IMG/VR virus record: IMGVR_UViG_3300027771_001853
Span: 124,001 to 188,000 of that record
Length of the DNA stretch: 64,000 nucleotides
Direction: 5' to 3' (one strand)
The notes beneath the pieces are model-generated. The model saw only the letters and a list, made by a program, of their open reading frames with translations. It did no database searches and was not told where the DNA came from. This document shows, piece by piece, positions 36,801-64,000 of this stretch. The position numbers were made by a program, and so were the translations under genes. Within the stretch, counting starts at the first letter, position 1. Every line of letters starts with the position of its first letter.

Positions 36801-37270
36801 TCATTTATACCAGTATAAATTTTACCGTCACTTAATCCTACCACTGTACATGGTGAACCTGAAAGTACAAATGAAACCGAACTAGCTGAACATGTTAGAC
36901 CAGTTACTGAATTACAATCTACAGCCCCTTGTGTACATAATTGCCACGCTGGACCTGCATCATAACCAGTGTAACCCAATACCCTAGTTACGAATAACTG
37001 GTTGGATTGGGTTAGATAACTCTTTGCTATGTAAGGTAACTCATACTTTGGGAATGTTGTGTCCACATACTTTTCAGCACTTGTAGCACCAAAATAAGAT
37101 GAGAACTCACTCCAATTAGTTATAAAAATAGGTTCAAAAGCTGGACCTCTTAAAGTCTCACCTGCTAAACCTAATGTTGTTACACCAACACTCTGTGCTA
37201 CGAATGTTAAGTCTTTTTCCGAGGTATACACACCTGGAGATACGAATACTCTATTACTGTTACTTGCCAT
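33863..37270 (-). CDS. Contractile tail sheath protein (gp18-like) with large insertions
   Basis: VSPGVYTSEKD, GPAFEP, SNYTATYYPW, PWFASAGYTRG, RINPI, WGNKTLQ...SALDRINVRRLL and IKPTRSLEFI. Confidence 0.95.
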   Translation of the reverse strand: MASNSNRVFVSPGVYTSEKDLTFVAQSVGVTTLGLAGETLRGPAFEPIFITNWSEFSSYFGATSAEKYVDTTFPKYELPYIAKSYLTQSNQLFVTRVLGYTGYDAGPAWQLCTQGAVDCNSVTGLTCSASSVSFVLSGSPCTVVGLSDGKIYTGINEWLWMFSGGSSTAGDYSTNLIARSIDNNIPLADGGATSLRKEITAFFDELCSEASHPGGFDPSVSGDPANYPNQPINLPGTPQYDKFVSAATASYTFGCTSSGDSLEEVFQGGGMSPYYSGVTAQNALSTNCDDWCSTASEPWLYGLFNYNSDSNYDGIGFNMSVSGMTDGSWSGSTGIFSGTVQFSTCAFSGHSFKDFDGKTVATLRSRGLSSLDSGGPVYEVPTNAAWAHPKYGGGAGSPGISSTGVTYNCTGGTYNASQSNPFASFGLDVMNDDGTNFAFKVSMGQGNADYLPRVLGRAPFDKDRKEVPIFVEEIYPNWLTHSYNQGKIKGIRCEALFSPSVQEGGSNSMGYYLEEFQTPATPYVVSELRGTNVYDLFRVITIPDGDAANTTVKISIINISLERREFDIQVRDFYDTDANPIVLEKYTRCSMNPTLNSYVAKRVGTSNGEYELLSRYIMLQVADYHEDDDTRWNAVPEGFKGYITRANGCDGVCPIYKTHYDQPGELVQDPPFAAPTYSSGDKFRRIYLGFSDNMGIDSDFLQYKGKPMPANGNLCTNQTLNDWSMLCKGYHMDSGATVVKFTSPAPASITGTSMFEVGNASLATEPTQSNHPYYNLFSRKFTFLPYGGFDGWDIYRKTRSNEDTYMLSQSGWNYGACSTSQYPNASGWGIFRTRGTDAANTDYYAYLDAINTFQNPEAVNINVFATPGIDYINHSNLVEETIEMIEADRADSLYVTTTPDYSMNANTFNVTNIVQPQEAVDNLDATGIDSNYTATYYPWVQLRDNDNNVQLYLPPTYDVMRNIALTDNIAFPWFASAGYTRGIVNAVKARKKLTLDERDILYKGRINPIATYSDVGTIIWGNKTLQVRESALDRINVRRLLLQARKLISAVAVRLLFEQNDEQVRNEFLDLVNPILDSIRRERGLTDFRVVLSDDPSLIDQNTLSGKIYIKPTRSLEFIDIEFLITPTGANFEDI

Positions 37271-49206: not shown

Positions 49207-49497
49207 TTATACAAAGTCTGTTCCGTAAAGTACTAGTTCACCATCTATACCTAAAGTACCACCTTGATTTATATATTCATCCGCATGAAATGTTTGCATG
49301 TTTTCAAAGATGCAATAGGTGTCCCCAACTTTGAGTGGGGATGGGTGAGCTCCTAGACTTAACATTTTTAGTAAGTCTTTAGTTCCCGCTACAGTGTGAC
49401 ATAACTGAGTTAACGTCACGCTAGAATAGAAAGTAGTTGGTAGGGGTATGTCCCCACCTTGGAAAACTTCTATTATATTTTTACAATTACAACTCAT
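49207..49497 (-). CDS. Small hypothetical protein
   Basis: 96-aa ORF translationally coupled to the 1051-aa gene. Confidence 0.6.
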   Translation of the reverse strand: MSCNCKNIIEVFQGGDIPLPTTFYSSVTLTQLCHTVAGTKDLLKMLSLGAHPSPLKVGDTYCIFENMQTFHADEYINQGGTLGIDGELVLYGTDFV

Positions 49498-52400
49498 TAC
49501 TTATATAGGTTACCTATTAATGTAGCACTCGCTTTTTTATTGGTGTCTACTCTATTAATAATTATTTGCACTATATCGTTTGGCCCAACGCAGAACGGTA
49601 AAGTTTCTACTATAACATCAGTAATTACCGAATTGGGGTATCTCTTGATGGTAAATGCACTTACATTGTCCACTAAAATCGATTTAAATTTAATACCTTC
49701 ATGCTTCGTAACGTCTATATAAGTGTCAAATCCATCAAAATCTAAGACTGTTGTTGGTACTGGAAAGTTTAACATTACGTCAACAGAATCACCTTCAGTA
49801 TAGTATACCGCTCTTCCTTGGTTACACGGTGTTTCACCACACTGACAGTCTATAAGACCATATCTATCTTTTTCTACTAAGAAATTATGTTGTATTTCAT
49901 CCACACCTAAAGGTTTTAAATAATACCTAAACTGTGATATTGCCCCCATAAATGTCCCTGCAAAATTTTCTGTTATACAATCTACCTCGGAATCCACAAT
50001 TATATCACAACCATCACAACCATCAAACCTAAAAGATTCTAATAAACCTTGTGAACCACCACCCCAACTAATATTAAATGGTACCCCAACTTGTAATTGA
50101 TTTGCTGTATTAAGTTGTCTTGGTATCACTTCTTCAAAATTTCTATCCACGAAAACTGGTCTACCATTAACATAAATTGTTAATGTACCCATTCTAAATT
50201 TCTTTTCCTGTACCCATTTTTTTGTAAAATTTAAATAGGTAGGTAGTTCTATATCATTATACCCAAATACCGAATCTACTCCAGGTATCGGTTCGTGTAT
50301 TAAATCATTTACACCACCTTTATTTTCTAAATCACAACAATCCCAACAATAGTCTCTTTCAAATACAGCACTAACGTAAAGCCAAGGTGCTTCTGTTTGT
50401 CCGGTAAAATCACATATAATATCATCACTAAAACGATTTACTACAGTACATGCTGTTATGTAGGTAAAAGCTGTACCACAATTAGGGTTACCAGAACCTA
50501 CTTTATATGGGTGACCACATCTATCGTAATGTATTGTTTCGTCGGTAGTTCCCGTAACAACACAACCACCAGAGAAATATAAAGCCCTATATCCCACCCT
50601 ATAACCTGTTTCACAATCACCACTTAACATTAGAGCAAAATTATTACTACAACAATCAACATAGTAAGGGTACGTTGAAGCTGAAACACAATCTTCATGT
50701 ACGTTCCCACAGTTATCAGTATGGGTACTACATCCCGCAGTTTGTAGTGTTATAGAATCACCGGAACAAGACGGTTCACAAGTTTCTATACAATTTTCTC
50801 CAGAATAGGGTATCCTAAATTTATTCTCAGCTCTTGTACCCATATAAAAGAATATCCCTTTATTTTCTGGGAACAAATCATTTAATGTGTACCCATCACA
50901 TATATTATTACACCTAGGCCTAATAATGGTTTCCACCGTCCATCCACACTCCACTCTTGTTGGTAGTACCTCATATGGGTAACCTTGTAATTTGTAGAAT
51001 CCTTGATAGAACCCACCATTTAATTCATTATAATAACCTTCACAACTACCAGTAGCACTAGTTATACTGTAATTAATATTATAACTACTATAACCAGTAA
51101 CTGGTTTTAATTTTAAACGACAGTCATAATCGTACGGACTATGTGTTAATCCACTTGGTAGTATGGACCATATATTCATTACGTCATTAGCTGTCCTTGC
51201 ACTTTGTGTTACCACATGCACTGTAACGTCAGATTCATAATAACTACAAGTTGTAGTTTCTGTAACTGGTGAAGTTGTTGTGGTTGTAAATGGTGGCCAA
51301 GCGGTTGTTGTCGTTGTTGTTTCCCCTATCCATCCTTGGTCACAATGAGTACAAGAACTAAATACACCAGCAATTATGGTAGCTTGGCTACCTCCCCAAC
51401 CGGTTGTCCCACTAATTACCCTATAACAATCCGTAGAACAGTCAGGCCATCCCGACTCTAAACGATAATAGCTGTCAGCGGATAATGTTATGTCTAAACA
51501 AGATGAACCCGTTAGAACGACTGTAATCGTCCCACCTGTACTTACACATGGTTCTACCTTATACAATAATTTACATGTTGTTGTAGTTGTGGTTGTTGGT
51601 ACTAATGTGGTAGAACTTGTTGTTGTGGTGAGGTGGGGGTTGTATGTCGTGGTTGTAGTTGTTGGACACAAATCCGAACACACCCCACTAGATGTAGGGT
51701 CACAGCACCCACTAAAAGGACCATTAATCACCAACCCTTGGATGTTAGAACCTATAGTTTGCCCACAACCACTAATAATTTGTCTACAGTGTTCTATACC
51801 ATTAGAGTTTGGTGGTGATAAGACCTCGTAATAACTCCCACCTAATAGTGTGGATGCTGATAAAATCTGGTCAAATTGTACGACATTACCGTTCGCTGAA
51901 CAATTTCTCATCGTATAACAATATCCTGTTATCGGAGGTGAGGTTGTTGTGGTTGTTGTTACCGCTGACCATGGCATTGTTGTACATCCAGAACTTAAGG
52001 ACATAAACGTACTAGCTGTACCCCCAGTAAAATCGGTAACAGTTAATTTGACCCTTGATGGTCCTTTGTAAGTTTGTGCGTATGTATTATCAAAAAATCC
52101 GTACACGGTATCCCCTGTACCAACAAATTGGTATGATTGACCACTGTAACCACCCCAAGAATCACTAGAAGTGTATGCGGTACCAAATGTAGCTAGATTA
52201 AAAGTAGTTCCAGTATATGGGTAAGCTTGTTGTTCCCATTCGTAAGTATATGGTCCGGTACCACCACTTGTAACCCCAGATAACGTGTGGGTAAACGCGG
52301 AACCATTAGTATACTCACAGGCCTTTAACCAATGCATGGTACGTATTGCGTGGTCAAATTGGGAGTGTGCTGGTTGACCGAACCTAAGTGTATTCCAATT

Positions 52401-52652
52401 TGCCGCGGAAACATATAGTCCACCATCACCTCCAGTATCACCAGACATTTTTATTGTATCACCAATAAAGTAATATCCTTCATCGAAAAATGGTGGTTGG
52501 TACCCAAATGCGTTACTAGCATTATTGTAAATATAAGTCAGTGAACCCCCTGGTTGTAGTGGGTTTTCTTGGTCTGATGCCCATATAGCCCCCGGATTAC
52601 AGTAATCTGGATTAGCATATAGTGAAACATGTACGTTACCTGTATAGGCCAT
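49497..52652 (-). CDS. Cys-rich structural protein with poly-Thr linkers and a C-terminal LamG/ConA-like region
   Basis: Several T4-T8 runs. C-terminus GWTVETII...GTLTIYVNGRPV...ISWGGG...FMGAISQFRYYLKPL...EIQHNF. Confidence 0.6.
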   Translation of the reverse strand: MAYTGNVHVSLYANPDYCNPGAIWASDQENPLQPGGSLTYIYNNASNAFGYQPPFFDEGYYFIGDTIKMSGDTGGDGGLYVSAANWNTLRFGQPAHSQFDHAIRTMHWLKACEYTNGSAFTHTLSGVTSGGTGPYTYEWEQQAYPYTGTTFNLATFGTAYTSSDSWGGYSGQSYQFVGTGDTVYGFFDNTYAQTYKGPSRVKLTVTDFTGGTASTFMSLSSGCTTMPWSAVTTTTTTSPPITGYCYTMRNCSANGNVVQFDQILSASTLLGGSYYEVLSPPNSNGIEHCRQIISGCGQTIGSNIQGLVINGPFSGCCDPTSSGVCSDLCPTTTTTTYNPHLTTTTSSTTLVPTTTTTTTCKLLYKVEPCVSTGGTITVVLTGSSCLDITLSADSYYRLESGWPDCSTDCYRVISGTTGWGGSQATIIAGVFSSCTHCDQGWIGETTTTTTAWPPFTTTTTSPVTETTTCSYYESDVTVHVVTQSARTANDVMNIWSILPSGLTHSPYDYDCRLKLKPVTGYSSYNINYSITSATGSCEGYYNELNGGFYQGFYKLQGYPYEVLPTRVECGWTVETIIRPRCNNICDGYTLNDLFPENKGIFFYMGTRAENKFRIPYSGENCIETCEPSCSGDSITLQTAGCSTHTDNCGNVHEDCVSASTYPYYVDCCSNNFALMLSGDCETGYRVGYRALYFSGGCVVTGTTDETIHYDRCGHPYKVGSGNPNCGTAFTYITACTVVNRFSDDIICDFTGQTEAPWLYVSAVFERDYCWDCCDLENKGGVNDLIHEPIPGVDSVFGYNDIELPTYLNFTKKWVQEKKFRMGTLTIYVNGRPVFVDRNFEEVIPRQLNTANQLQVGVPFNISWGGGSQGLLESFRFDGCDGCDIIVDSEVDCITENFAGTFMGAISQFRYYLKPLGVDEIQHNFLVEKDRYGLIDCQCGETPCNQGRAVYYTEGDSVDVMLNFPVPTTVLDFDGFDTYIDVTKHEGIKFKSILVDNVSAFTIKRYPNSVITDVIVETLPFCVGPNDIVQIIINRVDTNKKASATLIGNLYK

Positions 52653-52681
52653 AAAGTAATTATTTATTTATATATAAATAA

Positions 52682-53653
52682 TCAGTAAGGTCGTTTCGAC
52701 TCAACGAATCGCTTTATTTCTTCTACATATTTTATTGCACCGAAATCTGGTGAGTAATTTTGGAACTTTTCTGGGTTATTTTTGTACTCTGTGAATGGAC
52801 ATTTATTAATAAATTCACCCTTATAAAACTTTTCTCCTTTCATCTCATCTAGTATTCCAGCTAAATGAAATATGTTTTTTTCTTCATATCTAGAAACTGG
52901 GTCAGTGGCCCAACTAAAAGCCAATTCAGGGTGTAAAGCTGTTTCTTTTTCAAAATACCACATATTCCATAATATGGACCACATTTCCGCAGTCCAGAAT
53001 TGTATGTGAGCGGGAATTGGGTGTTTGTCCCCAAACTTCTTAGTAGCGTCATATATCCTATTACAATCAATATCTACCTTATGCCAAAAATGATAATCAG
53101 TATCCTTTATAAGATATTGTGCTCCCCCAGATTTACTATTATTTTGTTTTATTACATCCACTGATACACCAACCTTATCTGCCATATCTTCCAATAATTC
53201 GATATCACCTAGTTGTGGGTGCTGTGATTTATACCTATCACAACAACCTTTTATGTAATTATAATCTATGTAACCAGGACATTCAGAAACATAACTTATA
53301 TCATCAAGTAACATTGACCCAAAATCCGGTAGTTTCCTAAATAAAATATCTGAATCAGTTAAGAATATACACTTACCATCTTGTGGGTATTCCTTTAAAT
53401 AGTGTTTTACTAAGTGTGGTTTAATACTTGGGATGTACGACCTATTTGTTCTAGTATCTTTATAAAAATGAATATTATCAGGGTAGTCTCTTAGTAACTT
53501 TTTTAACCCTTCACTTGGTTCTTGAGCTCCATTCATTAAACCAAATATAGCTCTACATTTTTTAATAATCCCAAATTTCTCAAAATTAAAGAATAACATT
53601 CTTATTTGCCAATGAAAGTATGGTACGTCTGGTTGTGCACAGATAAAAATCAT
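52682..53653 (-). CDS. GT-A fold glycosyltransferase resembling peptidyl O-glycosyltransferases (SERGT1/HPAT-like)
   Basis: PYFHWQ, YIPSIKPHLVKHYL, DxD motif FLTDSDILF, GGAQYLI, WTAEMWS and IFHLAG. Confidence 0.7.
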   Translation of the reverse strand: MIFICAQPDVPYFHWQIRMLFFNFEKFGIIKKCRAIFGLMNGAQEPSEGLKKLLRDYPDNIHFYKDTRTNRSYIPSIKPHLVKHYLKEYPQDGKCIFLTDSDILFRKLPDFGSMLLDDISYVSECPGYIDYNYIKGCCDRYKSQHPQLGDIELLEDMADKVGVSVDVIKQNNSKSGGAQYLIKDTDYHFWHKVDIDCNRIYDATKKFGDKHPIPAHIQFWTAEMWSILWNMWYFEKETALHPELAFSWATDPVSRYEEKNIFHLAGILDEMKGEKFYKGEFINKCPFTEYKNNPEKFQNYSPDFGAIKYVEEIKRFVESKRPY

Positions 53654-53704
53654 ATATATTTTTTATATAAAATTAAATTGTTTTTACCTATAGTAAATGG
53701 ATTA

Positions 53705-55627
53705 TCAAATAGAAGAATTACATGACGCACAATCCGTGTAAGAAGCGTCTATAGTGTGTTGTATAGGTCTGGTAGTACTTCCTGCATTATAGTAACACTT
53801 GTCATTAACTTTTATATAATTAGATGAGGTAGGAGCTACCACTAAAGAACCATCCCATGAAGAAATGTTTAATTTAGATTCTACCTCATCTATACGATTG
53901 GCAATACCAATAAACCCATTAGGCCAAATACTATTTATATCTCCAGATGAAGCTCCACAACACATATACCTTGGGTAATTACCAGCAAAATTAATTCCGA
54001 CTATTTTTAATGCTCCACCTACACAACATAAAATCGCTGCACCGGAATCACCTCCGACACCAGGAGATGGGTCACCATCACCAGCTGATTTGAATAATAT
54101 TTGTTGGTCGTACATAAAATTAGGGTTACCTAATTTTATATTAGCAGCATTAACTGTTATTATTACTACGTCAGGATAACTCACACTTAAGATGTTACCA
54201 CTACTTCTACCTACTTTATAAACATAACTCCCCACCAACCCATTTACTTCTGCTGTTGTAGCGTGTTGGTATGGTCCCCAAGCTAGACCTAATATAGTTG
54301 TTGTTGGCTCTTCTGTTAATTCTATAAGTGCAGCGTCTACTTTATTTTGTGTGTAGTTATAACATAGTGGGTGGAATCTTTTCACTGAACCCATCTGTAC
54401 TCCCGCACTTGAATTTCCATTATCAGGATAACTAGGTTGTTGTGTTACGTACCCTGTTGACCAATTTGCTCCTTGTAACCCACCATTAGCAGTTGCACCA
54501 GCGGCAGAACCACAATCTATACCAGGATAATTAATTGGGTCCGCGTTTAGCCCAGCTGAAGCAAAATTATAACCTATAACATGATTATTAGTCACACCAA
54601 CTATTTTATCATCGGTATTATCGTAGGCTAACCACCCTAAAGTACCACTACCCGAACCACCCATAGATGGTGGGACTAAGGTTGTACCAATACTAACACC
54701 ACCAGGAATAGCTCTTTGGTTACTACTAGGTGTATAATAAGCGACACCATGGTCTGAACACGCAGGAACACTAATAGATGTTATATTACCACTGCAATAA
54801 CCTAGATTACCTGGACCATAATTAGGACTACATTGTGTACTTTCAGCTAGTATTAAAGCTTTATCATACACACATGTAGAATGTAATACTATCTCACTTG
54901 AAGTTGATATATCTGTTGGGATACCTCCTAGTTCTGACGGCAATAATTCACTATTACTTAATTCACTTAGGTTTTTCTTTTCTATTACATTTAAAGTAAT
55001 ACAATAAATTTCAGTATCCACATTATTTGTAATTTTTCGTCCCACGTACATAGATGTTAGACCTGTGGAAGTGAATGTACCAGAATATTTGTTTACCACA
55101 TAATCATGATAGGATTGGTGTTCAATTCCGTTAGAGTCGGTATAACCAGAATATATAGGGTCACTAGATATTGTGGCTCCTTTAACTCTGACTGTTGGTT
55201 GGACGTTTATAGTCATTTGTATTCTACCACCACCCCCTACGATTGATGGTGTTATAATATTTCCAGGTGTACACCCACTTTGACCATCACATGGTCTAAA
55301 TAATGTAGAAGTTGTTGGTGGTGAGTATGTTGTTGTCGTTGTGGTACCTGGTTGTGTTGTAGTTGTCGTAGTAGCTGGAGCTGCGGTTGTGGTCGTAGTA
55401 GTAGTAAAACAAGTATCGATTATCAAATCAGAACAGCTTGTACATCCAGAAGCATCTATTATTTGTAATCCGTATGTACCACAACATGCTGTAAAATACA
55501 CACAATCGTAATTTGTTGTAGCTACATTATTACACCCAGTTTCACATCCTTGGTTACAAAGACTTACACTATAAGGTGATACCCCACCACCCATACTAAT
55601 TGTTATACCTGTTAAATTACATGCCAT
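53705..55627 (-). CDS. Cys-rich / poly-Thr protein with trypsin-like (S1) serine protease domain
   Basis: GTLG...VTNNHV (His), VDAALI (Asp), KVGRSSG, GGDSGA (Ser) and VGINFAG. Confidence 0.8.
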   Translation of the reverse strand: MACNLTGITISMGGGVSPYSVSLCNQGCETGCNNVATTNYDCVYFTACCGTYGLQIIDASGCTSCSDLIIDTCFTTTTTTTAAPATTTTTTQPGTTTTTTYSPPTTSTLFRPCDGQSGCTPGNIITPSIVGGGGRIQMTINVQPTVRVKGATISSDPIYSGYTDSNGIEHQSYHDYVVNKYSGTFTSTGLTSMYVGRKITNNVDTEIYCITLNVIEKKNLSELSNSELLPSELGGIPTDISTSSEIVLHSTCVYDKALILAESTQCSPNYGPGNLGYCSGNITSISVPACSDHGVAYYTPSSNQRAIPGGVSIGTTLVPPSMGGSGSGTLGWLAYDNTDDKIVGVTNNHVIGYNFASAGLNADPINYPGIDCGSAAGATANGGLQGANWSTGYVTQQPSYPDNGNSSAGVQMGSVKRFHPLCYNYTQNKVDAALIELTEEPTTTILGLAWGPYQHATTAEVNGLVGSYVYKVGRSSGNILSVSYPDVVIITVNAANIKLGNPNFMYDQQILFKSAGDGDPSPGVGGDSGAAILCCVGGALKIVGINFAGNYPRYMCCGASSGDINSIWPNGFIGIANRIDEVESKLNISSWDGSLVVAPTSSNYIKVNDKCYYNAGSTTRPIQHTIDASYTDCASCNSSI

Positions 55628-55659: not shown

Positions 55660-57570
55660 TTACAAACAACTCCCATCATCTAAATTAGCTCCAGGATAAT
55701 AATTCGATGCTCCAGGAGGACCTATCGGTGAATTATATGAAGGTGCATTTGGCCCACCCATTGGACACAACCCATATACACCAAAGAACCCACCAGTACA
55801 AGTATCACCAACAAGTGGGTCTGGTGCTATACCGGTCGTACAACAACCACCATCCATACAACCATAAATAAAAGCTATACAAGAACCGTCCTCACAAGTA
55901 GCTGATGGGTCATAATTGAATGAGGTAGCGTCTGTACATCCAAATACACATACTGTTGTAGTGGTTGTCACTATAGCACCACAACAAGAAGTATCCCCAA
56001 CATTCCCATTCCATTGCAAAGTATTAATATTCATTTGTAATGCACCAGCACAATCAATATAAAGCCCATTTATCATAGTGGGTAACGATGGTGGTGGTAC
56101 ACCTATTTCTCCAGTGAAATTATAATTAGCACCATTTGGGTCTAAACAATTACAATAACCAAAACAAGTTCCTAAATCTATTTGAGCACCAGCATAGTAG
56201 TTATATGCTTCACAACCAGGGTAAGGTGACGTAAACCAACCAGTGGGGTTAGTACAACTGCCCGCATTTGGACAATTTGTCCCTACACAATTTCCACCAT
56301 CCATACAACCGTATACAAGTGCTACACATGAACCATCATCACATATCGCATTTGGGTCATAGTTACATGCTTGACTATCTGTACAACCGTCAGGTAAAAT
56401 ACATGAACCATCATCAATAATTGCGGTTGGGTCATAGTTACATGCTGTTGGGTCTGTACAACCGTATATACTTGACGTGGTTGAGGTTGTGGTACAAAGA
56501 CATAAATCACCATTCATCCCAGTATCAACCGGTTGTCCAGCTGGTGGTGGTAAGGTTGGTGGGAACCATTGGTATATATCCCCGACTTGGTTACATTCAT
56601 ATTGTGTCAGACAAAGATTACAACCATCAATAGCTCCTGGTTGGGTGGACCACACTGGTGGGGACAAAGTAATTAAAGGAGAACCACTACATGGTGGACC
56701 AATTAGTTTATAACATTCTTGTAACCCAGTACCATTTAAATTATTCCATGATTGAGCCAAAAACACCGTTCCTGGAACCATACCAGATATGATAGCCGTC
56801 CAATCATACGGGAAGTTCACTTCTACTCTATAGATTGAACCGTCACAACACTTTTCCACACACCAATATGGGTTAGGTGGTTGTGTTGTTAGGGTTGTAG
56901 TGGTACACACATCACCAGGTGGAATAGTACAGCTCTTACACGTTACCGGGGTAGGGTTTATAAGTGTACCGTCAGCTTCAGCACATACATAATTCGCTGT
57001 AAATTCTATAATCTCCCAACAAGCTCTATAGTGAGTAATACTACCATCGAAAAAGCTAACATAAGTCACATCCAATTCTAAGATTGTACCAATAGGGTAT
57101 GACCATACTATAGCATATAAGGTTGGTCCACCTGTTGCTGTTGCCATAAATTCTAGTGTCCCAAATTGTGGACACATTTTTACACCCCTATTTACCACTA
57201 TTGTTGTTGTGGTTGTTGTAGTTTGGTTGCATCCATCACAACATCTACAATATAAAGAAACCTCCGAATCACAAGGTGGACCTGGTGTTGAAGAGGTACA
57301 GTATTGACATATCGCGTCTCTGGCTGATGGTAATAGACTTAACCAATAAGAGTAATTACATGGTTCACCTTGGTCTAAACCACCACAACAAGAGTCTAAG
57401 TTACTTGTACCCGGTTGGTTGGCATTGTTACAACAAGACGTATTATCTTGACACAATTGTTGTGTAGCATAAATTGTATTATTAATTGGAGCTATCCCAA
57501 AGACACAACACGGATAAGGTGTTTGTATTGGGTTAGCTAAAGTTAATTCTGTGGGACAGTACCAAGACAT
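55660..57570 (-). CDS. Cys-rich repeat protein (GCTD..A.NYDP.A..DDGSC repeats) with poly-Thr linkers
   Basis: Three near-complete GCTD...DGSC repeats plus GCMDG variants with insertions. Very high Cys content. Confidence 0.75.
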   Translation of the reverse strand: MSWYCPTELTLANPIQTPYPCCVFGIAPINNTIYATQQLCQDNTSCCNNANQPGTSNLDSCCGGLDQGEPCNYSYWLSLLPSARDAICQYCTSSTPGPPCDSEVSLYCRCCDGCNQTTTTTTTIVVNRGVKMCPQFGTLEFMATATGGPTLYAIVWSYPIGTILELDVTYVSFFDGSITHYRACWEIIEFTANYVCAEADGTLINPTPVTCKSCTIPPGDVCTTTTLTTQPPNPYWCVEKCCDGSIYRVEVNFPYDWTAIISGMVPGTVFLAQSWNNLNGTGLQECYKLIGPPCSGSPLITLSPPVWSTQPGAIDGCNLCLTQYECNQVGDIYQWFPPTLPPPAGQPVDTGMNGDLCLCTTTSTTSSIYGCTDPTACNYDPTAIIDDGSCILPDGCTDSQACNYDPNAICDDGSCVALVYGCMDGGNCVGTNCPNAGSCTNPTGWFTSPYPGCEAYNYYAGAQIDLGTCFGYCNCLDPNGANYNFTGEIGVPPPSLPTMINGLYIDCAGALQMNINTLQWNGNVGDTSCCGAIVTTTTTVCVFGCTDATSFNYDPSATCEDGSCIAFIYGCMDGGCCTTGIAPDPLVGDTCTGGFFGVYGLCPMGGPNAPSYNSPIGPPGASNYYPGANLDDGSCL

Positions 57571-57606
57571 ATTTTTATATTATTTTATTCATTAGTGATA
57601 AATAGT

Positions 57607-60600
57607 TTAGAACGGTAGACTTTGGCAGCTAGCTGGAATTGGCACCAACAACCCAGCATTACATTCAGTACAATTTGCCCATGTTTGGTTTAACGTAGTA
57701 TACCCGTCTGTATCTAGGTATGACATAGAGGTAGGTATAACTTGGTAACATTGTGATTGTAATGCGCTACCACCTACCGGTAATAAGATTAATTCTATTA
57801 CCGTACCAACCACAAATGAAGTTAATAAATTTTCTAAATTACTCCCCGTAGTAGGTTTATATTCCTGGTAATAAAGAGTACCTAGTTTTGGACAACACGC
57901 TCTAATTAAAAGATTACTAGATACTGGTTCAGTTGTGGTGGTTGTGGTACCTGGACAACATCCCTCTGCTAACTCAGTATAACCATGACCTGGTGGGTTA
58001 TAACTGATTAAATGGGCACTTAACTGGCTACAAGAATGGGGAGAAGGGTTACAGATAGTAACAAAACTATTAACGTTAACTAAAGTAGTAGCATTACCTA
58101 TAACCTCCACACAAAGAATTTTATCTCCAACCACAGGAATATTGAAGGTACCCGCAAAGGTATCTCCCACATTCAGTCCTTGGATGTATGTTAGTAGTGA
58201 CCCTGTTGCGGTATAGTGTTTATATGGTGCACAACACATTCTAATACCTAATACCACTGCAACTGATGTGGTTGTGGTGGTATTACCTAAACAACAGTCT
58301 GGGTCTGAAGCTGCACCCCAAACCCATAGTGGTGGGTTAGGTACGGTCTGGAGTGATGAACCAGCACTTATTGAACTAGAAGTTACATATATAGGATAAA
58401 TGTCTTTGTCTTGGGTAACACCATAAATGTTTTGGTTATAACAATATAACCCAAAGGTTACAACCCCACCCATATTAACCGTACCTAATAGAACACCAGT
58501 ATTCAAATCATAATAAGCTAATTCACTTCCTGTACTAGTTGCTAAAGCGACTATTAATGTATTACTCCCCGCTAAGTATAATATATCCCCCTGAACAACA
58601 TCACTCCCTGTTAAAGCTATAGAACTAGATAGTACAGCTGTATTGGTGGTTATATCTATGCTACATATATCCCCCATACATGGTGTAGCGTTCCAAGAAC
58701 TACCCCCAATTAAAGTAGTAGAATCTATAGCCGTTAAACCATTACCTATTTGAGCTGGAGTCGTAATCTCTCTGTTCCATGTAACATTACAAGTAACGGG
58801 GTCTATAATATATTCTTGAATTTTTATACTATAATATACCCATATTAGATTACCATACCTTGCTATATCTGCACTATAGCCTAGATTTTGTGTCGCTGTA
58901 AATAATAAATTAGTCTGATTTGTCGTATGGTTATAATTGTAAATGCCTGGTGGATTTGAACCATCTACAAATAATACACCACAAGAATCACATAGAGCTG
59001 TGGTTGTGGTGGTTGTTGTTGGTGACGTGGTGGTTGTGGTAGTTGGGCAACAAGTACCTAAATTATTATTACCAAGGAAAGCATCTAACTCGATACAGTC
59101 ATTCTGCATTGAGTATCCTACCGCGGTATCAACTATAAGACCACTAGGGTTAGTTATGATATTCCAACAAAGATTAGGTGTAGTTACCGAAGCACTACTT
59201 AAACTACCATAAAAGGCTTGGCCTATATTGTAACTTTGAATAAACGCTAATAGGTTACCTGTGACCACATACTGAGTAAAAGGGTAACAACATTCTTCTA
59301 GCCCTAACAAACTTGATGAGGTTGTGGTTGTGGTAGCTGGACAACAACCATTTAAAAGGTCTGGGAAACCATAACCGTTGTAAAGTTGTGTGTTACCATT
59401 TAAATCAGTACAGTCATTTGAGTATACCGTAGGACTAAAAAGCCATTCAAACTGACCCGTTTGTACTTGAGGGGAAGATAAAGGTATATTCATATCCATC
59501 TCCATACAAGCTGTAAGGTCCGTCCCATTAGGTAATGTTATTGTCATTACAAAAGCTCTAGTAAATGGTGGAAGACTATAGTCTATAAGGTTATAAAGTG
59601 AACTATTATAAATTACCTCATATTCCGTATAAGGGTCACAACACAATTTAAGACCAACTAAAGCACTAGTAGTTGTAGTTGTTGTTGGTGGTGAGTATGT
59701 TGTTGTTTCACAACATGGTGTAGCGTTCGCTGATACCAGACAATCTGGTTCGTATTGGTAAATACAGTTAGGTCCTGAACTACAGGGTTGACAAAAACAA
59801 TTAACCGTACAAAGACACAAACGTCCAGCCCAAGATAACATATCGTTAGGTGCATTATTGTGCATTTTTCCTATCACTTGACTCCAGTGGTCACTATAAA
59901 GAAAATCTTGAGGCCATGAATTAGTTGTGTTTATTACATTTAACGCGTCTATTAACATTTCCCAATGAGCGTTAATTGTTACTGGTCCTGATAAAAAATA
60001 TGACCCATTTGATGCGGATGAAACAAAACCGTTAATTTTATAATAATACCCGTCACCATTATATAAAGAACCAGTATTTTCACATATGTAACTTTGACCG
60101 ACAACAATACTAGGGTTTATAAAGAAATAGTTATCGAAGATTTCACTAGTTCCGTATGTAGCAACCAAGTAATCTGTATATATTTGATTATTAGTGTATT
60201 GTCCATTAACTGTCGTAATACCAGGTGGTGTAAGTTCAGTATCACTGCTATCACAACCTATCGCGTCTACACCTGGAACTGGTGTAAGTGACGAAACACA
60301 TTCCCACCACTGTGTTGTAGTTGTTGTTACTGAACATTGAAAGTACCATGGTGATTGAGCAATCCAACTTAAACAGGTAACACAGTTAGGTTGACCTGTT
60401 GTCCAATCGGCGGGTGGGAGTGGTGGTGTTGTAAAACCACCCGTAAGTATTACCCAACTTGGGCAAGAGGTATCTATAATTTTAAAGCAAGAAGTGAAGA
60501 CAACCCCTGCAGGGTCCGATACTGTCAACGCAAGAACCGTTTGTCCTGGAGTGTAAGCAGCATTTGCTATTATAACATATAAAGGACTACCCAATGTGAC

Positions 60601-63540
60601 CGTATATTGGTTGTATGGTGAACAACAATCTTCTAACCCCAGTCTGTCACAAATAATTGTTGTTGTGGTTGTTGTTACTGGTAGACAACATGGGTTTCCT
60701 TGAGCTGCTACATCACATAACACGTAACTACTATAGACACAATTTAATGCAGGTGGTACACAGGGTTGACAAAAACAAGGGTTAAAGCAACCACATTCTA
60801 CAACATTTATTAATAACGTATCTCCAGCGGCATTGTTAGTCATTCTTACAATAACTTGGTCCCAAGTATCTGACGTTACGAAATCTTGAGCCCATCCATT
60901 AGTTTGGTTTATACCGTTTAGAATCGTTATAAGCATAGCCCAAGTAGATAATGTGGTTGTTTGACCTGAGAAGACGTAGGAAATATTAGCATTACTTAAT
61001 TGTATCTCACCCACCTTTTCATGTCTACCTAAACCACTATACAACAAACTTAAATTTTCACAACCAGCTAGTGATAGTGTGGCTGTTGGGTTTATATAGT
61101 GATAGAACATGTATAGTGCTGCAGCACCAAAATTCTGGGTAATATGGTTAACAGCCTCAACTCTATTTTGGTATGGTGTATTTCCACCATTAATCCCGGC
61201 TGGTATAACGTATGTTGTTGGGAATTGGTCCCCACACCAGTTTGCGTCTATACCGGGTACAAGTGGTGGTGGTGTAATACATTCGTGCCAATCATCTGGA
61301 GGACAACACCCTAATTCCATACCTGGAAAATAATACGTTCCTGCCACTATAGCGATATTAAAATCAATACAACCCATATCGGTAGTAGGTGATAACCACA
61401 AAAACCCATTATTTATTACATTTATGGGTGATGGATTATTGATTACTTCAGCACAAGTTTGTATTACCGAACCGTCAGGTAAAGTCAACTCGAATATATG
61501 AGCACTACCAATACTAAGCCCTTGTATTAAACTATATAAGAAATTACCACTAGGGATAATATATTGGTCATAAGGTGGACAACAAAGTTCCACACCTATC
61601 GCTAGTGTCGTAGTTGTGGTTGTTGTTGGTCCTGGTGTTGTGGAAGTTGTTGTTACTGGTTGACAACATGGTATTGCGTTAGCAGCGATATCACAAATAC
61701 TAAAATCATTAAATATACAAGGTGTGACCCCAGGTGTGAAACATGGTTGACAAAAACAAGGTGGTTGGTTACATGTACAAGGTCCCCCATAGGTATTCCA
61801 TGACTCCGACATGTTATTTGACTCCTGTTGTATTAACATAACAACCGTGAATCTAGAATCGATATAAGTAAAAACTCCTGGTGTGATACTATTAAGATAA
61901 TCTATAAACGATTGCCAGTTGTTGATGGCACCACTACCGACATAAAGCACATTTGCAGCGTTAGTTATAATATGTGTAGCTTTACTATAACCCATACCTC
62001 CCTGTGCGTATGGGTTTGTTGATGGAACAGACACACATTGGTTTGCCAAGGTATTCGGTGGAGTACCGGTTTCATGATAAAAGCTGCCCCAGGTTACATT
62101 AATGGGGATATTCCCATTTATTTGTTCATCCATTAAATATTCACACGCTCCAATAATGGAGATAGAAGCATGTGGTTTTAGGGTTAAACTATCACAGGAG
62201 GAACCATTAGTGATAGTTGCTAATGGTGGTGTTATGCATTCGTACCACACTGTAGTTGTAGTTGTTGTTAGTGGTCCGGTAGTGGTTGTTGTGGTTGGGG
62301 TACTAGTAGTGGTTGTGGTTGTTTGACCAGGTAACGTGGTGGACGTGGTTGTTTGCCCTGGACAACAAGGTATACCATTAGCTGATATAAGTGCTATAGA
62401 TAACGCATTACAACCTAGCATATTTATTAGTCCGTTTGATGTTAGGTCCGATTGGGTCTCCACCATATTAGCGACAGGTATACCAACAATAGGGTTACAT
62501 AATGGTTTCCAACATTCATTTTGTACTATCCCACCTGACACTAATAAGTTTGGTATTTGGAAGGCATAATTATCATCACAATTAAGTGAATTAAGTAATA
62601 GTAATAAATTACCTGTGGCCCCATATTGTACTGGTACACCAGTACCCACACAACAACTTTCTATCCCACATGTCACACAAGGGTCACCAGTAGTTGTAGT
62701 GGTACAACAATTATAACATGTGGTTGTAGTTGTGGTTATAGGAGCTACTGTTGTGGTAGTAGTTGTTAGGGGTTGTATTCCAGTTGTAGTGATAGTGATA
62801 ATAGGGCACTGTTGACAATCGACAACACTACCAAGTAGTCCTCTTGTTGGTGGTGTTCCAAAAGTGTTTCCACACTGTCCTCCAACATACCCAGTATGCC
62901 AATCACCACTACCCGGATTATTACTTACATCTATATCATAACTGGTTGGTCTGGGACTGTCACCCTCATAGTACATACATGTACCATCAGATAATTGAAT
63001 AACATCACCCTGACTTATAGGCCCTATAGCAGCAGTTAACTGGTTATGGAATGCCTGATTATTTGTATCAGTATTTGGTAAAAAACATGAACCTAAAGGC
63101 GGGGCCCCTGGTGTAGGAACTACTGGTACTGGATTAAAAGCGAGTGAATTATCACAATAACGCCAAGAATGATTGAGTCCGAAAACGGATGGTTGGGTTT
63201 CACACGCATCACAATCACCATATGGTTCAATAAACCAACCAGAATTTTGTAAAGAATGACCACCAAGATATTCAACATGTATAGCTTCTGGTGTTGCGAA
63301 GTCCCCTATATACTCAAAACAAGTCCAAAATTGTGGATATGGAGTTGAGTATAGTCTAATAAAGTCCCCAGGTACTATTTGATGCCCTGCACTTTGTTGG
63401 TAATAATAATTCTGAAAATGTTCATTGTTAGCTATTGTATTTCCTGGAGGCGAACCGGATTTACCAATATTACAATCGAAAGGGACTGGTACACTAAAAG
63501 GTTCGCTAGTAAAACAAGCTCTATATTTTTTATATCCCAT
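57607..63540 (-). CDS. Giant modular Cys-rich protein with poly-Thr linkers
   Basis: 1977 aa. Seven G[LIV]xxCC.PY.QY modules, three W.EC...CFCQPC...PCC modules and a propeller-like segment (YSADIAR...IGNGLT...VVQGDILY...WGAAS), mostly separated by T-runs. Confidence 0.8.
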   Translation of the reverse strand: MGYKKYRACFTSEPFSVPVPFDCNIGKSGSPPGNTIANNEHFQNYYYQQSAGHQIVPGDFIRLYSTPYPQFWTCFEYIGDFATPEAIHVEYLGGHSLQNSGWFIEPYGDCDACETQPSVFGLNHSWRYCDNSLAFNPVPVVPTPGAPPLGSCFLPNTDTNNQAFHNQLTAAIGPISQGDVIQLSDGTCMYYEGDSPRPTSYDIDVSNNPGSGDWHTGYVGGQCGNTFGTPPTRGLLGSVVDCQQCPIITITTTGIQPLTTTTTTVAPITTTTTTCYNCCTTTTTGDPCVTCGIESCCVGTGVPVQYGATGNLLLLLNSLNCDDNYAFQIPNLLVSGGIVQNECWKPLCNPIVGIPVANMVETQSDLTSNGLINMLGCNALSIALISANGIPCCPGQTTTSTTLPGQTTTTTTSTPTTTTTTGPLTTTTTTVWYECITPPLATITNGSSCDSLTLKPHASISIIGACEYLMDEQINGNIPINVTWGSFYHETGTPPNTLANQCVSVPSTNPYAQGGMGYSKATHIITNAANVLYVGSGAINNWQSFIDYLNSITPGVFTYIDSRFTVVMLIQQESNNMSESWNTYGGPCTCNQPPCFCQPCFTPGVTPCIFNDFSICDIAANAIPCCQPVTTTSTTPGPTTTTTTTLAIGVELCCPPYDQYIIPSGNFLYSLIQGLSIGSAHIFELTLPDGSVIQTCAEVINNPSPINVINNGFLWLSPTTDMGCIDFNIAIVAGTYYFPGMELGCCPPDDWHECITPPPLVPGIDANWCGDQFPTTYVIPAGINGGNTPYQNRVEAVNHITQNFGAAALYMFYHYINPTATLSLAGCENLSLLYSGLGRHEKVGEIQLSNANISYVFSGQTTTLSTWAMLITILNGINQTNGWAQDFVTSDTWDQVIVRMTNNAAGDTLLINVVECGCFNPCFCQPCVPPALNCVYSSYVLCDVAAQGNPCCLPVTTTTTTIICDRLGLEDCCSPYNQYTVTLGSPLYVIIANAAYTPGQTVLALTVSDPAGVVFTSCFKIIDTSCPSWVILTGGFTTPPLPPADWTTGQPNCVTCLSWIAQSPWYFQCSVTTTTTQWWECVSSLTPVPGVDAIGCDSSDTELTPPGITTVNGQYTNNQIYTDYLVATYGTSEIFDNYFFINPSIVVGQSYICENTGSLYNGDGYYYKINGFVSSASNGSYFLSGPVTINAHWEMLIDALNVINTTNSWPQDFLYSDHWSQVIGKMHNNAPNDMLSWAGRLCLCTVNCFCQPCSSGPNCIYQYEPDCLVSANATPCCETTTYSPPTTTTTTSALVGLKLCCDPYTEYEVIYNSSLYNLIDYSLPPFTRAFVMTITLPNGTDLTACMEMDMNIPLSSPQVQTGQFEWLFSPTVYSNDCTDLNGNTQLYNGYGFPDLLNGCCPATTTTTSSSLLGLEECCYPFTQYVVTGNLLAFIQSYNIGQAFYGSLSSASVTTPNLCWNIITNPSGLIVDTAVGYSMQNDCIELDAFLGNNNLGTCCPTTTTTTSPTTTTTTTALCDSCGVLFVDGSNPPGIYNYNHTTNQTNLLFTATQNLGYSADIARYGNLIWVYYSIKIQEYIIDPVTCNVTWNREITTPAQIGNGLTAIDSTTLIGGSSWNATPCMGDICSIDITTNTAVLSSSIALTGSDVVQGDILYLAGSNTLIVALATSTGSELAYYDLNTGVLLGTVNMGGVVTFGLYCYNQNIYGVTQDKDIYPIYVTSSSISAGSSLQTVPNPPLWVWGAASDPDCCLGNTTTTTSVAVVLGIRMCCAPYKHYTATGSLLTYIQGLNVGDTFAGTFNIPVVGDKILCVEVIGNATTLVNVNSFVTICNPSPHSCSQLSAHLISYNPPGHGYTELAEGCCPGTTTTTTEPVSSNLLIRACCPKLGTLYYQEYKPTTGSNLENLLTSFVVGTVIELILLPVGGSALQSQCYQVIPTSMSYLDTDGYTTLNQTWANCTECNAGLLVPIPASCQSLPF

Positions 63541-63575
63541 AGTTTATTATTTAACAATAAATACCCACATCATGA

Positions 63576-63998
63576 TTAAATAGGCGTACATGTAGTTGTC
63601 GTTGTTACTGGACAACATGGTATCCTTAGTGTCGGGTCTTGGTTCTGATAAGGTAACCAAGCTTGGAGACCAGCACACGGTGTTGGTGCTGGTGGTGATA
63701 GTAGTACGGCCCCTGTCACTGTTGGTCCGGTTGGGCTATTTATTATTCTTGCACAAACCGGTACACCACTGATAATAAATAAGTGTGAGGAACCTAAACT
63801 TAAACCATTTATATCAGTAAGTAGTGTTCCAATTGCTACGTATTGTTGGAATACTCCGTTCGTATCAGAACAACACTCTTCCAAACCTCTACCAGTTACA
63901 TTTACAGTTGTTGTTGTTGTGGTTGGGCAACACCCGACTGATTGTCCTTTGTCTTCACATGTGTCACACTGGTCTGTCAACCCGGCTGGCCAAATAGG
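63576..63998 (-). CDS. C-terminal part of another Cys-rich / poly-Thr modular protein (5'-truncated)
   Basis: The frame is open to the window edge (PIWPAGLTDQC...). It contains a GLEECC...QQY module and two T-runs. Confidence 0.75.
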   Translation of the reverse strand, partial: PIWPAGLTDQCDTCEDKGQSVGCCPTTTTTTVNVTGRGLEECCSDTNGVFQQYVAIGTLLTDINGLSLGSSHLFIISGVPVCARIINSPTGPTVTGAVLLSPPAPTPCAGLQAWLPYQNQDPTLRIPCCPVTTTTTCTPI

Positions 63999-64000
63999 GA

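What the first reader, a model, noticed from the sequence alone, without database searches (positions are those of the whole stretch)
57607..64000. Two uncharacterised Cys-rich domain families shuffled as beads on a poly-Thr string
Seen in sequence: module A (about 100 aa; G[LIV]xxCC.PY.QY...N/S-LL..I..L..G..F...C..[VI]I...C..L...CC) occurs 7 times in the 1977-aa protein, once in the truncated upstream gene and in diverged form in the 636-aa protein (CVEKCCDGSIY). Module B (about 200 aa; W[YHW]EC[IV]...W..[FL]I..LN.I...CFCQPC...C.[YF]....C...A...PCC) occurs 3 times, alternating with A. The copies are highly diverged at the DNA level, indicating old duplication and exchange between genes. Inference: an expandable adhesin/decoration family that I do not recognise as a described domain.
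Basis: seen in the sequence. Interest (0 to 1): 0.65.

Follow-up and report, generated by a model that had tools for sequence, protein, structure and literature searches.

The report
Novel Cys-rich beads on poly-Thr strings
A marine jumbo phage carries a 30-kb block of giant proteins built from two undescribed cysteine-rich domains strung on poly-threonine linkers; they are most likely exposed virion fibres or adhesins, but that function is inferred, not shown.

Summary
The 1977-aa protein (window 57607-63540, minus strand) has 7 copies of a ~95-aa module A and 3 copies of a ~205-aa module B, separated by poly-Thr linkers. A also occurs twice in the 636-aa neighbour. It occurs four times, not once, in the upstream gene, which is a 4512-aa giant running off the window.

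Trees show each bead position is its own clade across related phages. The duplications are therefore old and the architecture is mostly stable, with occasional gain, loss or reordering (8A/3B; 6A/2B).

The host genome is a 298-kb contractile-tailed phage, probably infecting marine Bacteroidota. The genes belong to a run of minus-strand genes that also holds the major head protein and a ~20-kb glycan-synthesis island.

An adhesin or fibre role, disulfide stapling and linker glycosylation are all inferences. These are new domain families in a known kind of architecture.

The parts
57607..63540 (-). 1977-aa modular protein (P0001): N-terminal region, then A B A·B A B A A C A A
62791..63540 (-). 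N-terminal region, aa 1-250. No signal-peptide-like hydrophobic start. Holds two copies of a third short repeat ('E') that is shared with the giant protein.
62689..62790 (-). First poly-Thr linker, aa 251-284. It contains the small CYNCC motif, which is present in all five relatives examined (CHNCC in P0006).
62359..62679 (-). Module A1 (aa 288-394)
61654..62250 (-). Module B1 (aa 431-629)
61300..61608 (-). Module A2 (aa 645-747), fused to B2 without a linker in P0001, P0006, P0007 and P0011 (not in P0008)
60676..61299 (-). Module B2 (aa 748-955)
60328..60651 (-). Module A3 (aa 964-1071)
59707..60312 (-). Module B3 (aa 1077-1278)
59338..59667 (-). Module A4 (aa 1292-1401)
59044..59316 (-). Module A5 (aa 1409-1499); this copy was the one modelled (pLDDT 91.9)
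58282..58998 (-). Domain C (aa 1515-1753), a different bead. Weak beta-propeller-like hits only, both below cut-off: PQQ_2 E 0.003 here, and DUF6923 E 0.003 in an orthologue.
57952..58260 (-). Module A6 (aa 1761-1863)
57622..57921 (-). Module A7 (aa 1874-1973), the most diverged A copy of this protein
63576..64000 (-). C-terminal 140 aa of the 4512-aa giant protein, whose gene runs off the window to genome 201114. Holds its fourth A module (about window 63606-63902).
55660..57570 (-). 636-aa Cys-rich protein (9.4% Cys). It has two diverged A modules (aa 125-223, window 56902-57198; aa 234-331, window 56578-56871), followed by repeats of a ~25-aa Cys motif.
49497..55627 (-). Rest of the cluster inside the window. 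A 640-aa protein has poly-Thr linkers and a weak protease-like PHROG hit. A 323-aa protein matches phrog_4417 and has no linkers. A 1051-aa protein has 4 linkers.

Best explanation
Modules A and B are two previously undescribed, independently folding domain families. Each has an even set of conserved cysteines (A: six, pattern CC..C..C..CC; B: twelve).

They serve as beads in very large modular proteins of a lineage of marine jumbo contractile-tailed phages whose hosts are probably Bacteroidota. Short poly-Thr runs of position-specific length act as extended spacers between beads.

I infer four further points:
- The proteins are made late, without a secretion signal, and are built into or onto the virion as long exposed fibres.
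- The cysteines next to almost every linker form disulfides once the particle is in oxidising sea water, stapling each bead.
- The varied beads (A, B, a propeller-like C, Lcl_C-like and others) bind host-surface or environmental polymers, giving multivalent adhesion.
- The repeat set arose by old tandem duplication and changes only slowly, by occasional bead gain, loss or reordering.

Shown: existence, boundaries, rarity, lack of known relatives, confident models, positional orthology, genome context.
Inferred: virion location, disulfides, binding function.
For: Repeats and boundaries.

No known family.

Models: A has pLDDT 91.9 and pTM 0.81. B has pLDDT 78.8 and pTM 0.69.

Rarity: only 10 of 1.84e9 representatives match the A profile. 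B is found only in orthologues.

Conserved synteny and bead order in relatives.

Positional orthology.

Cys at junctions: 37 of 53 linkers have a Cys within 6 aa upstream (background 25%). 21 of 53 have CC within 16 aa downstream (background 9%).

Conserved Cys counts.

Linker lengths are conserved position by position, and linkers use mixed Thr codons.

Phage identity and structural context: tail sheath, baseplate wedge and PolB. The major head protein, a late-sigma-like gene and the glycan island lie on the same strand upstream.

Marine distribution in at least 14 studies.

DnaK is of Bacteroidota descent.

An adhesin-type bead (Lcl_C-like, below cut-off) occurs in the giant.
Against: There are no proteomic, expression or structural data. 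No listed holder run is on record as RNA.

No bead matches a proven receptor-binding or carbohydrate-binding family above threshold.

The proteins are made in the reducing cytoplasm, so disulfides are not assured. No thiol oxidase was found, though that search was uninformative.

The cluster is flanked by a DNA polymerase gene on one side, so the neighbourhood is not purely structural.

The fold predictions rest on shallow, lineage-restricted alignments.
Confidence: 0.55

Rival explanations
1. The fibres are mucin-like glycoproteins. The poly-Thr linkers are O-glycosylated in the infected cell by the phage's own glycosyltransferases, using sugars made by the adjacent ~20-kb glycan island. This would give a glycan-coated fibre layer, as in Mimivirus fibrils or glycosylated mycobacteriophage virions. 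It refines the best explanation rather than replacing it.
For: The same minus-strand run of genes carries four or five GT2-type genes, two GDP-mannose 4,6-dehydratases, epimerases, a DegT aminotransferase, an AsnB-like amidotransferase and a sulfotransferase. These lie between the major head gene and the Cys/Thr cluster.

Thr runs are classic O-glycosylation substrates (general knowledge).

Virion glycosylation by phage-encoded enzymes has precedent (Freeman et al. 2023, as cited in PMC12619734). So does virus-encoded glycosylation of giant-virus fibrils (PMC9614988, listed).
Against: No link between these enzymes and these substrates has been tested. Phage sugar islands can equally modify DNA or the host envelope (PMC12619734). 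Poly-Thr or Pro-Thr linkers also work unglycosylated.
Confidence: 0.2
2. The proteins are not virion parts. They act inside the cell or are released at lysis, and the cysteine clusters bind metals (Zn or Fe-S) rather than forming disulfides.
For: There is no signal peptide and synthesis is cytoplasmic (sequence). The dense C.C...C.C..C cluster in B resembles metal-binding motifs. There is no direct evidence of virion association.
Confidence: 0.15
3. The proteins are virion-exposed but act as a shield rather than an adhesin. A dense coat of protease-resistant, disulfide-stapled beads would protect the particle from grazing, enzymes or UV, or increase its effective size, with no specific ligand.
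For: The architecture and context are the same as for the best explanation. Bead order and linker lengths are strongly conserved, which fits a structural role more than an arms-race receptor binder.
Against: The diversity of bead types, including adhesin-like ones, suggests binding. No data distinguish the two readings.
Confidence: 0.08
4. The feature is an assembly or annotation artefact: a chimeric repeat assembly or a non-coding open frame.
For: Contigs from public runs break or cross-join exactly at the linker-coding DNA, so bead order in short-read assemblies can be wrong.
Against: A 6875-nt contig of run X2 (a possible source sample) covers 58313-63540 with no differences. Pieces with almost no differences (at most 2 letters each) occur in marine, sediment and sponge runs from other studies. 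Three orthologues from other samples keep the reading frame, all conserved Cys and the synteny at 41-60% identity.
Confidence: 0.02

Closest known systems
Phage surface proteins made of tandem small domains (T4 Hoc and other Ig-like/BACON-type decoration and fibre modules)
   Same: Several small, independently folding, mostly beta domains in a row on an accessory phage protein, and an assumed weak multivalent adhesion. A's best shape matches in the ESM Atlas are uncharacterised phage proteins.
   Different: No Ig-like, FN3 or BACON match by sequence or fold. The beads are Cys-rich, are joined by poly-Thr spacers, and the proteins are 3 to 10 times longer.
Pro/Thr-rich linkers of secreted bacterial modular enzymes and mucin-type Ser/Thr-rich spacers
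   Same: Low-complexity Thr runs, often punctuated by Pro, separate folded modules. Such spacers are commonly extended and O-glycosylated (general knowledge).
   Different: Here the proteins lack secretion signals and are encoded by a phage. The linkers are nearly pure Thr, and their length is fixed position by position across relatives.
Glycosylated fibrils of giant viruses and glycosylated mycobacteriophage virions
   Same: A virus encodes its own sugar-nucleotide and glycosyltransferase genes next to structural genes (PMC9614988; PMC12619734 citing Freeman 2023).
   Different: Glycosylation of these proteins is untested. The fibril proteins of those viruses are unrelated in sequence.
'Moraphages', aquatic jumbo phages up to 307 kb with predicted Bacteroidota hosts (PMC12619734)
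   Same: Genome of 298 kb from marine samples. It has DnaK with only Bacteroidota as best relatives, a glutamine-synthetase-like gene and several glycosyltransferases.
   Different: Lineage membership was not tested by phylogeny. The word search found no 'cysteine' or 'threonine' in that paper.
Small disulfide-rich folds (Kunitz/BPTI) and OB-like beta-barrels
   Different: All scores are far below the tool's stated background level. There is no sequence similarity and the alignments cover only a minor part of B.

Membership tests
Any Pfam-A / PHROG / NCBIfam family (modules A and B) | Profile HMM match at or near the curated threshold | tested here: not met
   hmmscan of the whole proteins at E <= 1 (Pfam), 0.1 (PHROGs) and 0.01 (NCBIfam) gives no hit on A or B. 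The only hit is PQQ_2 on domain C, at 17.7 bits against a 27.6-bit cut-off.
Any protein with a solved structure | Sequence or profile similarity to a PDB chain | tested here: not met
   phmmer of P0001 and P0004 finds nothing at E <= 1. Profiles A6 and A5 reach at best E 1.7 and 0.031, both on unrelated chains.
Ig-like / FN3 / BACON phage decoration domains | Beta-sandwich fold recognisable by structure comparison | tested here: not met
OB-fold | Five-stranded closed barrel superposing on OB domains with a significant Z | tested here: inconclusive
Kunitz/BPTI-like disulfide-rich domain (Cys cap of B) | Three-disulfide alpha+beta mini-fold | tested here: inconclusive
Beta-propeller (PQQ_2 / DUF6923), domain C | Pfam match above the gathering score | tested here: inconclusive
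   PQQ_2 gives E 0.003 and 17.7 bits, below the 27.6 cut-off. DUF6923 gives E 0.003 and 17.7 bits, below 27, in orthologue P0008.
Lcl_C / DUF1566 (beads of the 4512-aa giant) | Pfam PF07603 match above 34.9 bits | tested here: inconclusive
   24.1 bits, E 4.7e-5, at aa 3237-3340.
Moraphage lineage (PMC12619734) | Jumbo aquatic genome; DnaK/DnaJ of Flavobacteriales type; glutamine synthetase; glycosyltransferase orthogroups; placement in the marker-gene tree | tested here: inconclusive
   Size, habitat, DnaK, a GS-like gene and the GTs are present. Phylogenetic placement and absence of RNA polymerase were not tested.
Secreted (Sec/T9SS) bacterial adhesins with PT linkers | N-terminal signal peptide or C-terminal sorting domain | tested here: not met
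   The N-termini of P0001, P0002 and P0004 have no hydrophobic signal-like segment (read directly). No T9SS CTD was found by Pfam. No dedicated predictor was available.

The most novel reading that the evidence does not exclude
This lineage of marine jumbo phages builds a mucin-like glycoprotein coat. Giant fibres of disulfide-stapled beads from fold families found nowhere else would have poly-Thr spacers that are O-glycosylated by the phage's own ~20-kb glycan-synthesis island. That would make it a bacteriophage counterpart of the glycosylated fibril layer of giant viruses.
Probability: 0.2. Interest if true: 0.85.

Novelty: new variant of a known kind. Interest (0 to 1): 0.55.

Why it matters
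Modular fibre and decoration proteins help determine how phages find hosts and persist in the sea. For the large uncultured phages of marine Bacteroidota they are essentially unannotated.

This locus defines two clean domain families with confident models and no detectable relatives. It also shows a simple design rule: cysteines flank nearly every poly-Thr spacer. Both families are ready to be named and expressed.

About 10% of a 298-kb genome is spent on these proteins, so they matter to the phage. The neighbouring glycan island makes virion glycosylation directly testable in a phage group where it has only been speculated.

The practical lesson is that short-read contigs break at the linker DNA, so such genes are probably under-assembled in viromes.

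Tried and rejected
- Back-translated pattern scan of IMG/VR. With the B alignment, 100 pattern matches were found but none was a relative.
- One combined A+B alignment for the single exhaustive search. MAFFT aligned the shared terminal CCP of A and B and stretched the A rows across B, so alignment A3 was discarded.
- B profile against proteins of 115-364 aa: no hit.
- tblastn of the whole protein against 50,697 GenBank phages: no match.
- hhalign of A against B: unrelated, apart from the six-residue CCP end.
- ESM Atlas feature search. Nothing usable for B. For A, only scores of 0.75-0.80, which the tool says shuffled proteins reach a third of the time.
- Erv1/ALR thiol oxidase search: no hit, but the control rang in no genome, so it is uninformative.
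- The precomputed PF26696 label on the 249-aa neighbour of a relative was not reproduced by hmmscan at E <= 0.01.
- The 'joints' in read laying that skip 317-3284 nt all start and end in linker-coding DNA with sides of 20-27 nt. I read them as cross-matches of Thr-codon repeats, not as real deletion variants.
- Three literature searches for poly-Thr or Cys-rich phage proteins and jumbo-phage fibres found nothing on these domains.

Full report
**What is there.** The window is bases 124001-188000 of a 297,623-bp IMG/VR virus record with an estimated completeness of 93%. Its genes include a 1135-aa tail sheath, a baseplate wedge protein, family-B DNA polymerase, an SNF2 helicase, DnaB, a UvsX-like recombinase, ribonucleotide reductase and a 2205-aa protein with an amidase domain. 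It is therefore a jumbo contractile-tailed phage. The ORF at 57607-63540 (minus strand) encodes 1977 aa with 5.5% Cys and 13% Thr.

Cutting at the Thr runs gives this order: an N-terminal region, then A1, B1, A2 fused to B2, A3, B3, A4, A5, a different domain C, A6 and A7.

**Is it more than chance?** Yes.
- BLASTP between excised copies reaches E 1e-12 for A (27-37% identity) and 1e-40 for B (30-39%).
- A profile of A, searched over all six frames of the whole genome, finds 13 copies and nothing else. The B profile finds exactly three.
- The 13 A copies lie in three adjacent genes: seven in the 1977-aa protein, two in the 636-aa protein downstream, and four at the C-terminus of the upstream gene.
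- The upstream gene is not a small truncated ORF but a 4512-aa giant (genome 187576-201114).
Its orthologues score about 1e-8.
- At the DNA level, only the Thr-codon stretches and a few motif-coding stretches repeat.

**The wider locus.** Genome 173.5-203.2 kb holds eight consecutive minus-strand genes. Seven of them (1051, 640, 636, 1977, 4512, 280 and 399 aa) have 4-9% Cys; six of these (all but the 280-aa protein) also have poly-Thr runs of four or more. That is about 10% of the genome. Segmenting these genes at the linkers gives 50 beads of several families.
- Besides A and B there are two Lcl_C-like beads in the giant, below the Pfam cut-off.
- There is a propeller-like domain C.
- The 636-aa protein has a ~25-aa Cys motif repeated in its second half.
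- A third short repeat occurs twice in the N-terminal region of the 1977-aa protein and three or four times in the giant.

A junction rule holds across families. Of 53 linkers, 37 have a Cys within six residues upstream (25% expected) and 21 have a CC pair within 16 residues downstream (9% expected). A and B share nothing detectable except this terminal CCP.

**Are the domains known?** No evidence says so.
- Pfam, PHROGs and NCBIfam give no match on A or B. PDB sequences and profiles give none.
- With alignments enriched from relatives, AlphaFold2 models A at pLDDT 91.9 and pTM 0.81. It is a small beta-barrel-like core with two helices.
- B is modelled at pLDDT 78.8 and pTM 0.69, as an alpha/beta body with a Cys-rich cap.
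- Foldseek against the PDB gives no E below 0.9 for either model.
- BFVD gives nothing for B.
- In the ESM Atlas, the two best shape matches for A are uncharacterised Uroviricota clusters (TM 0.63 and 0.57). A similar barrel may therefore exist in other phage proteins of unknown function.
- Weak echoes, OB-like for A and Kunitz-like for the cap of B, remain below any useful threshold.

**Distribution.** The A profile, scored against 1.84 billion cluster representatives, finds 10 proteins at E <= 0.001. Six are orthologues or fragments of the 1977-aa and 4512-aa proteins.

The other four are a second architecture: proteins of 263-374 aa (up to 409 aa among further homologues) with two A modules, no poly-Thr, and in the longer members a Cys-rich tail. 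They sit next to a conserved B12-type radical SAM gene. One member lies on a circular 298,241-bp contig that shares many genes with this phage at roughly 35-85% identity.

B was found only in the orthologues. The gene itself occurs almost unchanged in marine water, sediment and sponge metagenomes from at least 14 studies.

**Evolution.** Three full orthologues were recovered: 2062 aa at 60% identity, 1969 aa at 52% on a 301,804-bp contig, and 1449 aa at 41%. The first two keep the gene order giant, this gene, 793-797-aa protein, 641-642, 323, 1052-1058, 96; the 6-kb contig of the third shows only part of it.

Their bead strings are A B A B A B A A C A A (as here), A A B A B A B A A C A A, and A B A A B A C A A.

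In maximum-likelihood trees nearly every bead position forms its own clade across phages, mostly well supported (A2 is unresolved). For example A1 is 100/100, A4 100/100, A7 100/97 and B1-type 100/100. The duplications are therefore older than the divergence of these phages.

Linker lengths are also position-specific and conserved, for example five Thr between A3 and B3 in this protein and the closest full-length relative and four in another. Only the A1-B1 spacer varies, from 35 to 63 aa. Linkers use mixed Thr codons, with no run of one codon longer than three, so they are not slippage-prone.

There are two signs of shuffling. The extra A in the 2062-aa protein is sister to the giant's second A (89/76). 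The 1449-aa protein carries a B1-type bead after A3 and a B2-like bead before A2.

Public contigs break at the linker DNA, so an assembly chimera cannot be fully excluded for that variant. However, the A2-B2 pair has no linker in the other phages, so a simple mis-join at linkers would not produce that order.

**Host and lineage.** The phage DnaK has 63-69% identity to Flavobacteriales and Sphingobacteriales proteins, and all 80 best genome hits are Bacteroidota. The genome also has a glutamine-synthetase-like gene and several GT2 genes.

These traits, the size and the habitat fit the 'moraphages' described from aquatic metagenomes (PMC12619734). I did not test placement by phylogeny. A word search of that paper found neither 'cysteine' nor 'threonine'.

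**How it probably works.** The following is inference. The proteins have no signal-like N-terminus. They lie in a largely co-directional ~65-kb run of minus-strand genes that starts with the major head protein (genome 236753-238591), interrupted only by a few small plus-strand ORFs. That run continues through a glycosyltransferase and a ~20-kb sugar-nucleotide and glycosyltransferase island, a late-sigma-like gene and several large unknown proteins, and ends with this cluster.

The most economical reading is late expression and incorporation into the particle as long, flexible, multi-bead fibres. Each bead would be stapled by disulfides once outside the cell, the Thr runs would act as stiff spacers, and the varied beads would give multivalent binding to host or environmental polymers.

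Whether the Thr runs are glycosylated by the neighbouring island is an attractive but untested extension. Rivals are a passive protective coat, non-virion metal-binding proteins, and assembly artefact (very unlikely). Each is listed in the rivals section with its refuting result.

**Verdict.** The claim of undescribed domains stands up to sequence and fold searches. Old duplication is supported. Exchange between genes is only hinted at. The adhesin or decoration role remains a reasoned guess.

I rate this a new variant of a known kind: new domain families and an unusual linker and cysteine design within the familiar theme of modular phage surface proteins. Interest is moderate to good, mainly for phage structural biology and marine virology.

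Noticed in passing
window 63576-64000 and beyond; L001:77-13615 (genome 187576-201114, minus strand): A 4512-aa ORF with 45 poly-Thr runs of four or more. It has propeller-like N-terminal parts, two Lcl_C-like beads, internal mini-repeats (a 16-aa two-Cys unit; T6 units spaced by LPGQ or YAIP) and four A modules at the end.
   Followed up: partly
genome 213-236.8 kb (L009, L010), outside the window: A ~20-kb glycan island directly downstream of the major head gene. It holds two GDP-mannose 4,6-dehydratases, two further epimerases, a DegT aminotransferase, an AsnB-like amidotransferase, a sulfotransferase and at least four GT2-type glycosyltransferases.
   Followed up: partly
window 55660-56480 (C-terminal half of the 636-aa protein): Repeats of a ~25-aa Cys motif (GCTD..A.NYDP.A..DDGSC), seen as a 75-nt tandem repeat at 56326-56465 plus more distant copies. 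No Pfam match.
   Followed up: no
window 62700-62740 (aa 269-284 of the 1977-aa protein): A tiny CYNCC motif embedded between two Thr runs in the first linker, present in all five relatives examined (CHNCC in P0006).
   Followed up: no
L005-L008, L092, L093:10001-11230: A second architecture of module A. Proteins of 263-409 aa have two A modules and no poly-Thr. In the five loci with upstream context they lie divergently next to a radical SAM gene (B12-type in the one typed). One lies on a circular 298,241-bp contig related to this phage. This genome has no homologue of that radical SAM gene.
   Followed up: partly
window 59000-59045, 59667-59707, 60656-60678, 61606-61660, 62258-62322, 62719-62760: Contigs of public marine runs end or cross-join exactly at the linker-coding stretches. 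Such genes are likely to be fragmented or mis-ordered in short-read assemblies.
   Followed up: yes
window 14805-21422 (minus strand): A 2205-aa protein with an N-acetylmuramoyl-L-alanine amidase domain near its C-terminus (aa 1927-2046). It is probably a virion-associated lysin or tape-measure-like protein.
   Followed up: no
window 33863-37270 (minus strand): The tail sheath is 1135 aa. Only the last ~320 aa match sheath families; the ~800-aa N-terminal extension is unexplained. The best relative is Microcystis phage Mel-JY01 at 32% identity.
   Followed up: no
window 52682-53653 (minus strand): The one gene of the cluster with no poly-Thr linkers and low Cys content. This 323-aa protein matches phrog_4417 (E 1e-65) and has 34-36% identity to proteins next to the major tail gene in some Enterococcus phages, and to hypothetical proteins in Lactobacillus and a Chryseobacterium phage.
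   Followed up: no
genome 252120-253997 (L011) and 57482-57877: A phage-encoded DnaK whose 80 best genome relatives are all Bacteroidota (63-69% identity), and a glutamine-synthetase-like gene. Both traits were reported for 'moraphages' (PMC12619734).
   Followed up: partly
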